Source: Ostrea edulis
Taxonomy: Eukaryota
Assembly: GCF_947568905.1 (NCBI RefSeq)
Contig: NC_079168.1
Span: 49,290,001 to 49,354,000 of the forward strand
Length of the DNA: 64,000 bases
Reading direction: 5' to 3'
The number at the start of each line of letters is the position of its first letter. Position 1 is the stretch's first letter. Under the pieces are notes generated by a model, which saw only the letters and a list, made by a program, of their open reading frames with translations, ran no database searches and was not told the origin of the DNA. The position numbers were made by a program, and so were the translations under genes. Positions 9,601-12,600 of this stretch are shown here, piece by piece.

Positions 9601-12600
9601 AAATTTCACAATTCATATTCCTGTTATCCTAGAGATGCTTCCCATCAAAAATGGTAACAAATGGCCTTGTAATTTTCAAGAAGTTAAAAATGTAAAATTG
9701 TTAACGGACGACACAATGCACGACAACAAAAGGAGACCATCGGCAATAGGTCACCTGAGTGACTCGAGTGTCCTTTAAAAAAAACCCACAAAAGCAGTGC
9801 TTTTTTTTATTTTATAAAGTGCGGATTGGGTACCTATAAGAACTTCATATAGACTGTGGTACTGGGTGGTGAAAGGATATTACAAATGTGGTCTGAATGT
9901 ACAGCATGTGAATACTTACCACTGACTCATTGAATAATTAGGTTGTAAAATAAAGGTGAGTGAAGTATAAAGAGAAGTATGGTAACTGGTGTGGTCAACC
10001 CATAAATTTCACAGAATGCTAAATCTTAGTTGTCATTTTAAAACTCTGATCTAATATTTACACCTAGATTTGTTTATTTCAGTATGGTGTAAAAAGCTGT
10101 GTTGTGTTGGTATGACCTTGGCATGGGGGTATAAGGATATAGAATGATTTTTCTCACCTCCACCTTCTACATATAGATCTGGGTCATTGGCTACTCGATA
10201 CCTCTCAACAATCTTGTTAAGATCAGACTCACGAGAGATTTTCATAGCTACACAAAAGTTCATCAATGCTATCGATATTAATAATGTTTAAAATAGTGTG
10301 TTAATAGGTAAAATCAACTTTAATAATGTTACATTGAATTGACATACAATGTAACTACTCTGCGAACTTTGTGGTAATAATATGTTAACAGTAGTAAAAT
10401 CAACTTATATAATTTTACATTAAATTGACAAACCATGTAATTACTCTGGGAACTTGGTGGCTACAAATCTTACCTTCTTGCTGTGGAGGTTCATCATCGT
10501 CATCTGGAAAGCCGAGGTCTAATGACTGTGTGGACTGGTCGGTTTCTTTCTCTCCTTCTGAGGTCTATAAGTTTAAACAGATTTTTAAATTTTCAAAAAT
10601 CACAAATCCTCTCTTTTAATCCTAAACTAATCCTAACTTGAAAGTTTAACTTCAGGATCTTAAAATCTTATGTTGCTTGATTTGTGAATGAAAGTATGAC
10701 CTTGACCTTTGATCTTGAGAAATAACAAGCATATCTTCCTCTCAGCATGGAGAAAATGTTCAGAATAACATATATGTATGTACATACAAAATCATTCATG
10801 AGAACCTTATTTTCGTGATAAGGTACTGAATATAATTTCATGGGTTGTAATTTCCCCCATTTTTCTCTTTTTGACACGATCATGATTTAATAAATTCGCA
10901 GATGTATTAAAAGAAGAAGAGTTGATTTGGTTCCTCATTTGAAATCATGCTTACGGTCATAGGACACCCAAGATTTTGAATGTGTAAAATGAAATAGGAT
11001 GAAATTTGATGTGTTTAGTGGGATTTTCTTTTATTTGAACAAACAACAATGTAAATCGGTCATTAATACAGTGGAACCCCGTTATTACGTTTTCCATTTT
11101 GTCACGATAAAATAACGTAATACCGGGGGCAACGTAATAAACGTTCCCAGTTAAATCCGTTAAAAATATCATTTGGAAATTGTATATCGTCCGTTGGTAC
11201 TCCGTGAAGGGGTGTGTGAATATATCTTTACTGTTTCTTTGTTACTATGATACTTTGTTTTATTTACATCTTATCTTTAATGTCCGTAATTCTTCATGTT
11301 CTTATCCCTTTTCTTTATTTCGGTGTAGGATACATAAGGATGTTTTGATAAACGTTGCTTTTTCTGCATTCGTTTGGACCGCCATTTTGTTCAACTTTAA
11401 AACAATGCGTTCATGTAAATTTCTCTCAATAACTCGTTCCGGTTCGTATTCAACATTCGTATTTAAAAAATAACAAAACATCGTTTTTATTAAGTTCTCT
11501 AATTACACAATACACAACACAATAAAAAAAATCCCGCCCAAAAAACAACAAAACTATAGACACAAAACGCACACGATACCCAACACTTACACACTTCTCA
11601 CCAACGATAAACACGGAGAACAATTTAAGCGCAATCCACATAAAAAAAAAAATATAATGATGCACGAAGATTTCATTTATAACGCTAAATGATGGCACTA
11701 AAATCACGTGCGCATCAAGGGATTTTAAATATTCACCGAGGTAAATGCTGTGCACGAATCGGCCGATAGATTGGTGTATGTATGGACGAGATTTACGAAC
11801 ACCCAAGCTGCATGTCGAAACAACGAACAATTTTTTTAATTGAACACCTTTAATCACCTATGTCCAAGCAGTTACCCAAGCGGTTGTAACATTGCTACGA
11901 TAAATCTTGTCTTTCTTGTTTGGTACCAAAGCTTTCCGTGAATAGAGTTTTAATATCGAAGGTAATCACACTATGCTGAGCTGAACATGCAGGCGGTTGA
12001 GAAATTATTTCTTTGATTATCAAAATATGAAAAATGAAGTAAATTTCATAGAGTACAATTTCTAAATAAACATTATTTAATTGTTTATCACTGGCTTCTA
12101 TACGGGGTATTCACCTGTATTGATGTCGCTAGATCTATCGAAGCGTGATCAGTCAAGCGTCTCTAATCCCCAAACAGACCAGGAAATTTAGGTGGTGACT
12201 GCCTCAGGCAGTCAAGGTGTGAATGGCTTATTATTTTGAGAATCACTATTGAATAATTAGGGGTTTATTACGTTTTTGTCGGAATTTTTACAACGTAATA
12301 CCGAGTCCCGGCATTTTAGGACAACGTAATAACGAGGTCTATTTTATATAGGTTTGTTAAGAAATGGTTTTGTGCTTTGAAATTCCAACGTAATATGCGG
12401 ACTAACGTAATAAAGGGGGAACGTAATAACGGGGTTCCACTGTACATGTTATACACCAAGAAAAAGATGTTTTTGTGGAATTTCAATTTTGGGGTATTGT
12501 TTTTCCATCAAATTTCAAAGTAAAGATTGGTGTATAATGCAAAAATAAAGGTGGTTTCATGGGACAACTTTGAATATGGCTTTTTAACAATATTAAAACA

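What the first reader, a model, noticed from the sequence alone, without database searches (positions are those of the whole stretch)
10158..10247. Cassette exon that would insert a Y-acidic cargo-mimic motif (DLYVE) next to the TPR domain
A frame-preserving 90-nt exon with good splice sites lies between the LFP-like acidic linker and TPR1. It encodes ..[17 protein letters not shown] matches the D-hydrophobic-Y-hydrophobic-E pattern of the JIP1 C-terminal motif (EDIYLE) bound by KLC1 TPR (established). Vertebrate KLC autoinhibits through an intramolecular LFP motif that mimics W-acidic cargo. This exon could add a splice-switchable intramolecular mimic of Y-acidic cargo (inference). Its first full codon is ATG, so it could alternatively start a TPR-only isoform.
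Basis: partly seen in the sequence, partly recalled or inferred. Interest (0 to 1): 0.72.

Follow-up and report, generated by a model that had tools for sequence, protein, structure and literature searches.

The report
Conserved oyster kinesin-light-chain cassette exon
The 90-base stretch is a genuine, rarely used optional exon of the flat oyster's kinesin light chain gene. The Pacific oyster has it too, but the idea that it mimics a cargo motif to regulate the motor remains an untested guess.

Summary
The window is Ostrea edulis, and the minus-strand gene is a KLC1-type kinesin light chain.

**Observation.** It is correct. Positions 10247-10158 form an AG/GT-bounded, open, phase-preserving 90-nt segment between the LGFP-acidic exon and the TPR1 exon. 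It encodes ...[15 protein letters not shown].

**Why it is not chance.** These features alone prove little, since the same intron holds 51 open frame-preserving AG..GT segments. Conservation does. Crassostrea gigas RefSeq isoforms X1-X5, X12, X13 and X17, and UniProt K1PTU0, carry a 30-aa insert at exactly this junction. It is 20/29 identical, although introns of the two genera do not align.

**Distribution.** The pearl oyster Pinctada shows no counterpart in the equivalent intron.

**Usage.**
- Two RNA-like contig sets join 10474 directly to 8501.
- One run has no contig on the cassette. The other has a contig over it at about 12% of the exon depth, which also runs into the upstream intron.
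- No O. edulis protein model includes the cassette.

**Y-acidic mimic idea.**
- For: the D-x-Y-x core is conserved, and the oyster TPR keeps both KLC1-type asparagines.
- Against: the acidic residue after the tyrosine is glycine in C. gigas, the motif is internal, and JIP1 binding needs a free C-terminus.
- The structure and complex predictions gave no answer.

The parts
10158..10247 (-). Candidate cassette exon, 90 nt, phase 1 to phase 1. It adds 30 residues ([30 protein letters not shown]) between ...PPQQE and (V)LSPSQ...
   Evidence: Sequence; translation and frame; orthologous 30-aa insert in C. gigas isoforms; single copy in the genome
10248..10249 (-). Acceptor AG, preceded by a modest pyrimidine tract (AACTTTTGTGTAG)
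   Evidence: crude acceptor score below that of the TPR1 exon
10152..10157 (-). Donor GTGAGA after GAG; a strong 5' splice site
   Evidence: score equal to the real exon-3 donor
10168..10215 (-). Conserved core of the insert, K-I-V[10 protein letters not shown][IL]-Y-[LV]. Every position written as a fixed letter is identical in O. edulis and C. gigas
   Evidence: pairwise comparison
10165..10179 (-). DLYVE, the JIP1-like D-hydrophobic-Y-hydrophobic-E pentapeptide. In C. gigas it reads DIYLG
10224..10225 (-). Two adjacent polymorphic bases inside the cassette in other O. edulis-like contigs (Ser synonymous, Asp>Asn)
10474..10564 (-). Exon 3: acidic linker with the LFP-acidic equivalent ([17 protein letters not shown]); ends in phase 1
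   Evidence: (joint at 10474)
8273..8501 (-). TPR1 exon; its GYEIPARL...LALVY stretch is identical to human KLC1
   Evidence: (joints at 8501 and 8273)
13602..13841 (-). Exon 2: heptad-repeat (KHC-binding) region
22068..22286 (-). Coding part of the exon that encodes MTSLSQEE...SEAQ

Best explanation
The segment is a genuine alternative cassette exon of the Ostrea edulis kinesin light chain gene, conserved within the oyster family and included at low frequency. When included, it inserts 30 residues into the disordered linker, directly after the LFP-acidic autoinhibitory motif and 20 residues before the first TPR helix. This lengthens the LGFP-to-TPR1 spacing from 33 to 63 residues. It also adds a conserved block, [13 protein letters not shown][IL]-Y-[LV]. 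Shown here: the exon anatomy, its conservation in Crassostrea, and predominant skipping in the available transcript contigs. Inferred: the insert tunes how the linker and cargo motifs compete for the TPR groove. It could do so through its own acidic-tyrosine motif or simply by changing the tether. Which of these applies is not resolved.
For: The gene is a KLC1-type light chain of O. edulis: the TPR1 exon matches human KLC1 structures at E 1e-61, and RefSeq O. edulis isoforms X13-X16 match the window's exons and sit on a contig of 94,306,699 bases, the length of the window's contig. C. gigas isoforms X1-X5, X12, X13 and X17, and UniProt K1PTU0, carry [30 protein letters not shown] at exactly the ...PPQQE | LSPSQ... 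junction. The insert has the same length and phase, is 20/29 identical, and most replacements are conservative (I/L, S/T, N/D, E/Q, V/L). For baseline divergence, a C. gigas genomic contig aligns to O. edulis only across exon 2. There 24 of 80 third codon positions differ, and about 850 nt and 700 nt of flanking intron give no match. An unconstrained intronic 90-mer would therefore not be recognisable. An RNA-like run of a close relative (organism B) has contig depth 23.5 over the cassette bin, against 194 for the constitutive exons. Its other unique intron bins in this stretch read 0 to 1.7.
Against: No spliced junction into or out of the cassette was seen in O. edulis. The shown joints are 10474<->8501 in both RNA-like runs, run X7 has no contig on 9856-10431, and 268 further joints were not displayed. 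The contig in run X5 also covers about 40 nt beyond the bin border at 10287. That places it 40-80 nt into the upstream intron, so it is not bounded by the proposed acceptor. The only database protein matching the O. edulis cassette ORF is an unspliced read-through from collinear genomic-type contigs. No O. edulis, C. angulata, C. virginica or newer 'Magallana gigas' model contains the insert. The C. gigas models might descend from the 2012 gene prediction rather than from reads, which could not be checked here. Two of the three SNPs in a 1.25-kb O. edulis-like contig fall inside the 90 nt, and one is non-synonymous. C. gigas nucleotides for the cassette could not be obtained, so codon-position analysis was not possible.
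Confidence: 0.78

Rival explanations
1. First reader's mechanism. The included cassette acts in cis as a Y-acidic cargo mimic. Its D-[IL]-Y-[LV] motif occupies the JIP1/TorsinA pocket of the same chain's TPR domain, giving a splice-switchable second autoinhibitory or selectivity element beside LFP-acidic.
For: DLYVE is the only strict D-h-Y-h-E match in 128,000 six-frame residues of the window. N-D-P-D-[IL]-Y-[LV] is conserved between the two oysters, and C. gigas even reads DIYL as JIP1 does. The oyster TPR has Asn at the equivalents of KLC1 N343 ([10 protein letters not shown]) and N469 (TLKNLGALY), which the paper holds entirely responsible for Y-acidic specificity for KLC1 over KLC2. About 20 flexible residues separate the motif from TPR1. 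An internal Y-acidic motif (SFPQ) binds the KLC1 TPR with a Kd of about 4 uM (PMC7721913).
Against: The p+2 acid that salt-bridges R266 in the JIP1 complex is Gly in C. gigas. Amidating the JIP1 C-terminus abolishes binding, and TorsinA compensates only with a C-terminal acid at p+3. Here p+3 is Gly and the chain continues (PMC6214655). The conserved block is much longer than a short motif (KIVxRYRVA upstream), which suggests another or additional role. AlphaFold2 of the C. gigas linker plus TPR leaves the cassette at pLDDT about 30, with only a weak helix at DKIVQRYRVA and no sign of docking.
Confidence: 0.12
2. The region serves as an alternative first coding exon. Transcription starts inside the intron some tens of bases upstream of 10247, translation starts at the conserved Met (10245, or the in-frame ATG at 10263), and the donor at 10158 splices to TPR1. 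The product would be a TPR-only light chain lacking the heavy-chain-binding heptad region and the LFP-acidic motif.
For: The Met at the first full codon is conserved in C. gigas. The run-X5 contig over the cassette extends into the upstream intron (bin 10288-10431 depth 6.9) but not below about 10144-10158 (bin 10000-10143 depth 0). That pattern fits an exon ending at the donor and starting upstream of the proposed acceptor. The frame is open from 10287, and the first ATG in that stretch is in frame.
Against: No protein starting at this Met was found among candidates of 322-1025 aa that share words with the cassette. All C. gigas models use the exon as an internal cassette. The contig's ends and joints were not displayed, so the pattern could also be partial intron retention or DNA carry-over.
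Confidence: 0.1
3. Chance pseudo-exon, or a conserved non-coding intronic element. On this reading the coding appearance is accidental and it was propagated into C. gigas models by ab initio prediction.
For: The same intron holds 51 open frame-preserving AG..GT segments, and the acceptor is weak. Skipping dominates, and newer annotations of four oyster genomes lack the exon. SNPs fall inside it, including a non-synonymous one.
Against: Equal length, equal phase, no stop, 20/29 identity and mostly conservative replacements between genera whose introns do not align all fit a coding constraint. A non-coding element would have no reason to preserve these features. Depth over the cassette in run X5 is well above that of other unique intron parts.
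Confidence: 0.08

Closest known systems
Crassostrea gigas kinesin light chain isoforms X1-X5, X12, X13, X17 (XP_034324008 to XP_034324026 series) and UniProt K1PTU0
   Same: A 30-residue insert at the identical junction (after ...[10 protein letters not shown], before [11 protein letters not shown]), in the same phase. It is 20/29 identical and shares the core [13 protein letters not shown][IL]-Y-[LV] and the Met at the first full codon.
   Different: It is another genus. The end of the insert reads DIYLGGE rather than DLYVEGG. It is annotated there, whereas no O. edulis model includes it. The evidence behind the C. gigas models is unknown.
Y-acidic cargo motifs of JIP1 (YTCPTEDIYLE) and TorsinA (TVFTKLDYYLDD) bound by the KLC1 TPR (PMC6214655)
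   Same: A tyrosine with hydrophobic neighbours and acidic residues on the N-terminal side. The O. edulis version also has Glu at p+2. The receptor asparagines that confer KLC1 specificity are present in the oyster protein.
   Different: The known motifs are C-terminal and act in trans, and a free carboxylate or C-terminal acid is required. This motif is internal, sits in the light chain itself, is followed by Gly-Gly, and its p+2 acid is not conserved. Binding has not been tested.
LFP-acidic intramolecular motif of the KLC linker (Yip et al. 2016, as described in PMC6214655 and PMC13078783)
   Same: It lies in the same linker, upstream of TPR1, and acts in cis on the TPR groove to maintain autoinhibition. 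The oyster equivalent, [11 protein letters not shown], lies 12 residues before the insertion point.
   Different: LFP-acidic is constitutive, is conserved across animals, and overlaps the W-acidic site. The cassette is optional, restricted to oysters as far as seen, and no binding site is known for it.
Internal Y-acidic motif of SFPQ (ESEMEDAYHEHQANLLR; PMC7721913)
   Same: It is an internal motif, not C-terminal, with a tyrosine after acidic residues, and it binds the KLC1 TPR at low micromolar Kd.
   Different: It lies in a coiled coil of a cargo protein, and its binding is insensitive to N343S, so its mode differs from JIP1. There is no sequence similarity beyond D/E-x-Y.
Known KLC isoform diversity by alternative splicing (rat, sea urchin, squid, C. 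elegans; cited in PMC2148443; C-terminal variants in PMC8318374)
   Same: Light-chain isoforms are generated by alternative splicing to diversify regulation and cargo binding.
   Different: The variants that PMC8318374 describes lie in the C-terminal domain after the TPRs. This one sits in the linker between the coiled coil and the TPR domain. The positions of the older sea urchin, squid and C. elegans variants were not checked here.

Membership tests
Kinesin light chain (KLC1-type) | N-terminal heptad-repeat region, acidic linker with LFP-type motif, six TPRs | tested here: met
   Exon 2 finds KLCs at up to E 7e-42. The TPR1 exon matches human KLC1 structures at E 1e-61. The window's exons equal O. 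edulis RefSeq KLC-like isoforms X13-X16.
Alternative cassette exon | Canonical AG/GT borders, length divisible by 3, open in the phase set by the neighbouring exons | tested here: met
Alternative cassette exon | Orthologous exon conserved in a related genus at the same junction | tested here: met
   C. gigas insert: 30 aa, same phase, 20/29 identical. Introns are otherwise unalignable. No counterpart in the Pinctada intron.
Alternative cassette exon | Transcripts with both inclusion junctions in this species | tested here: inconclusive
   Only contigs could be laid. The skipping joint 10474<->8501 appears in both RNA-like runs. X7 has no contig on the cassette. X5 has a contig at depth 23.5 that also runs into the upstream intron.
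Y-acidic KLC1-binding motif (JIP1/TorsinA class) | Tyrosine flanked by acidic residues, with an acid at p+2 contacting R266 | tested here: inconclusive
   O. edulis DPDLYVE fits. In C. gigas DPDIYLG, p+2 is Gly and the next acid is at p+4.
Y-acidic KLC1-binding motif (JIP1/TorsinA class) | Free C-terminal carboxylate at p+2, or a C-terminal acid at p+3 | tested here: not met
   The motif is internal and followed by G-G-V-L-S. The requirement comes from PMC6214655.
Y-acidic KLC1-binding motif (JIP1/TorsinA class) | Receptor has Asn at the KLC1 N343 and N469 positions | tested here: met
   [10 protein letters not shown] in the window; TLKNLGALY in the adjoining genome stretch L005
Y-acidic KLC1-binding motif (JIP1/TorsinA class) | Measured binding to the TPR domain, lost on Y>A | not testable with these tools
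   Needs FP or ITC. In silico attempts gave no answer.

The most novel reading that the evidence does not exclude
Oysters have evolved a splice-controlled second cis-ligand for the light-chain TPR groove. Including the cassette would place a JIP1-like D-[IL]-Y-[LV] motif next to the LFP-acidic motif, so one kinesin-1 gene could switch between states that pre-occupy or free the Y-acidic cargo site.
Probability: 0.1. Interest if true: 0.75.

Novelty: new member of a known kind. Interest (0 to 1): 0.4.

Why it matters
Kinesin-1 is held inactive partly by its light-chain linker occupying the TPR cargo groove. An optional exon placed exactly between that autoinhibitory motif and the TPR domain would be a natural experiment in how linker length and content tune activation. 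It also carries a conserved acidic-tyrosine block resembling a known cargo motif. In practical terms, the O. edulis annotation appears to lack an exon that is conserved in Crassostrea. The case also shows that KLC isoform diversity in bivalves reaches the linker as well as the TPR domain, where RefSeq already models two mutually exclusive exon pairs. If the insert has no effect on groove binding, it is an ordinary lineage-specific minor exon.

Tried and rejected
1. My initial reading was a chance pseudo-exon, based on 51 comparable open AG..GT segments, a weak acceptor and the skipping junction in transcripts. I abandoned it after finding the C. gigas orthologous insert.

2. A word search with the 71-aa ORF across the cassette found only P0001. 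This is an unspliced read-through ORF from contigs collinear with 11069-9684, so it gives no isoform information.

3. The representative search with exon 2 returned mostly exon-level ORFs from genomic contigs that read into introns. It served only to obtain longer protein ids.

4. Fetching Crassostrea genomic DNA for the cassette failed. P0159, P0279, P0274, P0165 and P0163 are not on record, and P0002 gave only a 1.8-kb contig around exon 2. No dN/dS could therefore be computed.

5. Complex prediction was run with the C. gigas TPR (276-572) and the linker plus cassette (231-275). The score was 0.12 against a mark of 0.34, and the verdict was 'no answer'. It counts neither for nor against binding.

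6. AlphaFold2 of C. gigas residues 196-572 with a 36-row alignment gave a confident TPR domain. The linker and cassette had pLDDT about 30, with a weak helix at DKIVQRYRVA. This is uninformative, because only one aligned row contains the cassette.

7. A repeat or transposon origin is rejected. The region is single-copy in the 895-Mb genome.

8. A literature search for oyster KLC splice variants found nothing relevant.

9. A low-coverage DNA run of a third organism (X8) did not cover the cassette, so it gave no conservation information.

Full report
**What is there.** The minus strand of the window's first 22 kb carries a kinesin light chain gene.
- The coding exons read MTSLSQEE...SEAQ (22286-22068), the heptad-repeat exon (13841-13602), and a 91-nt acidic linker exon (10564-10474, ...[17 protein letters not shown], ending in phase 1).
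- Next comes the TPR1 exon (8501-8273), followed by further TPR exons that run off the window's start.
- The TPR1 exon matches human KLC1 structures at E 1e-61 and is identical over GYEIPARL...LALVY.
- A profile search returned 'kinesin light chain-like isoform X13-X16 [Ostrea edulis]'. These match the window's exons, and they lie on a contig of 94,306,699 bases, exactly the length of the window's contig. The genome is therefore Ostrea edulis.

**The observation.** On the minus strand, 10247-10158 is preceded by AG and followed by GTGAGA. It is 90 nt and open in the phase dictated by its neighbours. It would add [30 protein letters not shown] between ...PPQQE and (V)LSPSQ....

A crude scoring gives a donor as strong as the real exon-3 donor and a weaker acceptor than that of the TPR1 exon. 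The 1,972-nt intron contains 51 open, frame-preserving AG..GT segments of 30-300 nt, so the anatomy alone is not beyond chance. The strict pattern D-[ILVM]-Y-[ILVM]-E occurs only once in all six frames of the 64-kb window, and that place is here. The region is single-copy in the 895-Mb assembly.

**Transcript evidence.** Only Logan contigs were available, and no listed run was on record as RNA.
- Two runs behave like transcriptomes, because they carry spliced joints. These are X7 (the window's organism, by its label) and X5 (a close relative; one difference in 229 nt of TPR1).
- Both join 10474 directly to 8501, at contig depths 92 and 194, and both join 8273 to 6682.
- X7 has no contig anywhere in 9856-10431.
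- X5 has depth 23.5 in the bin 10144-10287 and 6.9 in 10288-10431, but 0 in 10000-10143. Its other unique intron bins in this stretch read 0 to 1.7. Something transcribed therefore lies on the cassette at roughly 12% of the exon depth.
- That contig reaches 40-80 nt into the upstream intron, and its joints were among the 268 not displayed. It cannot be assigned to cassette inclusion, an intronic start or partial retention.
- X1 is collinear DNA. Contigs also drop rare variants, so absence in X7 does not prove absence.
- The only database protein matching the ORF across the cassette is an unspliced read-through from contigs collinear with 11069-9684. These carry two adjacent SNPs inside the cassette, one synonymous and one Asp>Asn.

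**Conservation, the decisive evidence.** Among the best 120 KLCs of 211-670 aa, from molluscs, annelids, arthropods, nematodes and vertebrates, nearly all have 31-38 residues from the L(G)FP motif to IPARL.
- The one C. gigas entry, isoform X17, has 63 residues. It carries [30 protein letters not shown] inserted exactly after ...PPQQE and before LSPSQ.
- A region-restricted search and a cluster listing show the same insert in C. gigas X1-X5, X12 and X13, and in UniProt K1PTU0. They show none in any O. edulis, C. angulata, C. virginica or newer 'Magallana gigas' model.
- The two inserts have the same length and phase and are 20/29 identical. Their replacements are mostly conservative (I/L, S/T, N/D, E/Q, V/L), and they share the core [13 protein letters not shown][IL]-Y-[LV].
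- As a neutral baseline, a C. gigas genomic contig aligns to O. edulis only across exon 2. That alignment is 89% identical at the nucleotide level, with 24 of 80 third positions changed. About 850 and 700 nt of flanking intron give no match. An unconstrained intronic 90-mer would not have kept this similarity, frame and length.
- In Pinctada imbricata, the equivalent intron (L007:5407-6773) shows no counterpart by tblastn. The exon therefore looks restricted to the oyster family.
- One caveat is that I could not see what evidence underlies the C. gigas models. A second is that Crassostrea nucleotides for the cassette could not be fetched, so codon-position statistics are missing.

**How it most likely works.** What is shown is a conserved, optional 30-residue insert in the disordered linker. 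It lies 12 residues after the LFP-acidic equivalent and 20 residues before the first TPR helix, and it nearly doubles the tether.

Established knowledge places this linker in the TPR groove in the autoinhibited state, where W-acidic cargo displaces it (PMC6214655, PMC13078783). It is therefore reasonable, but only inferred, that the insert modulates this competition.

- In favour: the conserved D-P-D-[IL]-Y-[LV]; Asn at both KLC1-specific receptor positions; and a precedent for an internal Y-acidic motif in SFPQ.
- Against: the p+2 acid is Gly in C. gigas; JIP1 binding is abolished by amidating its C-terminus, and TorsinA compensates only with a C-terminal acid; and the conserved block extends well upstream of the motif.
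- AlphaFold2 left the cassette at pLDDT about 30.
- The complex prediction gave no answer and is not used as evidence.
- I put this mechanism at about 0.1-0.15.

A non-exclusive alternative is a TPR-only isoform started at the conserved Met from an intronic promoter. It fits the odd extent of the X5 contig but has no annotated counterpart.

**Comparison and novelty.** The nearest known thing is the C. gigas exon itself, already present in RefSeq and UniProt models. I found no paper that describes it. The O. edulis copy is thus a new, apparently unannotated member of a known kind. Its function is open, and the cargo-mimic reading would be new biology if proven.

**Verdict.** It is mostly skipped, and the mimic mechanism is unproven. 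Interest is moderate.

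Noticed in passing
window 6595-6682 and about 7001-7088; window 537-626 and about 1069-1158 (minus strand): There are two tandem pairs of near-identical TPR exons. O. edulis RefSeq isoforms X13-X16 are exactly the 2x2 combinations of these pairs, so RefSeq already models them as mutually exclusive. Both RNA-like runs join TPR1 to the distal copy (8273<->6682). Pinctada imbricata has both pairs too (L007 about 7662-7793 and 8119-8220; about 17797-17889 and 18249-18359), so the duplications predate the oyster/pearl-oyster split.
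   Followed up: partly
window 8730-9490: A tandem array of a 160-bp unit, 4.7 copies at about 75% identity, lies in the same intron. Contig depths in the thousands across all runs show it belongs to a high-copy dispersed element.
   Followed up: no
window 37641-40964 (minus strand): A 1,108-codon open frame has the look of a non-LTR retrotransposon ORF2 (endonuclease plus reverse transcriptase).
   Followed up: no
window about 49589-53398 (minus strand): Exon-like open frames resemble a translation initiation factor with a zinc-ribbon-like CPEC segment, a C-terminal W2-like segment and an acidic tail. This is probably the neighbouring gene upstream of KLC. It is named from memory only.
   Followed up: no
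C. gigas proteins P0247/P0159 versus O. edulis P0153, exon 2/3 junction: The C. gigas models read ...NQQSQVSTSEGEK where O. edulis reads ...NQQSQTSEGEK. This two-residue difference at the exon 2/3 junction suggests a shifted splice site in one lineage or an alternative site.
   Followed up: no
window 10054-10287 (minus strand): The reading frame of the cassette stays open 36 codons past the donor and 13 codons upstream of the acceptor. Prokaryote-style gene callers therefore report a 70-aa ORF (P0001) from unspliced contigs, which could be mistaken for protein evidence.
   Followed up: yes
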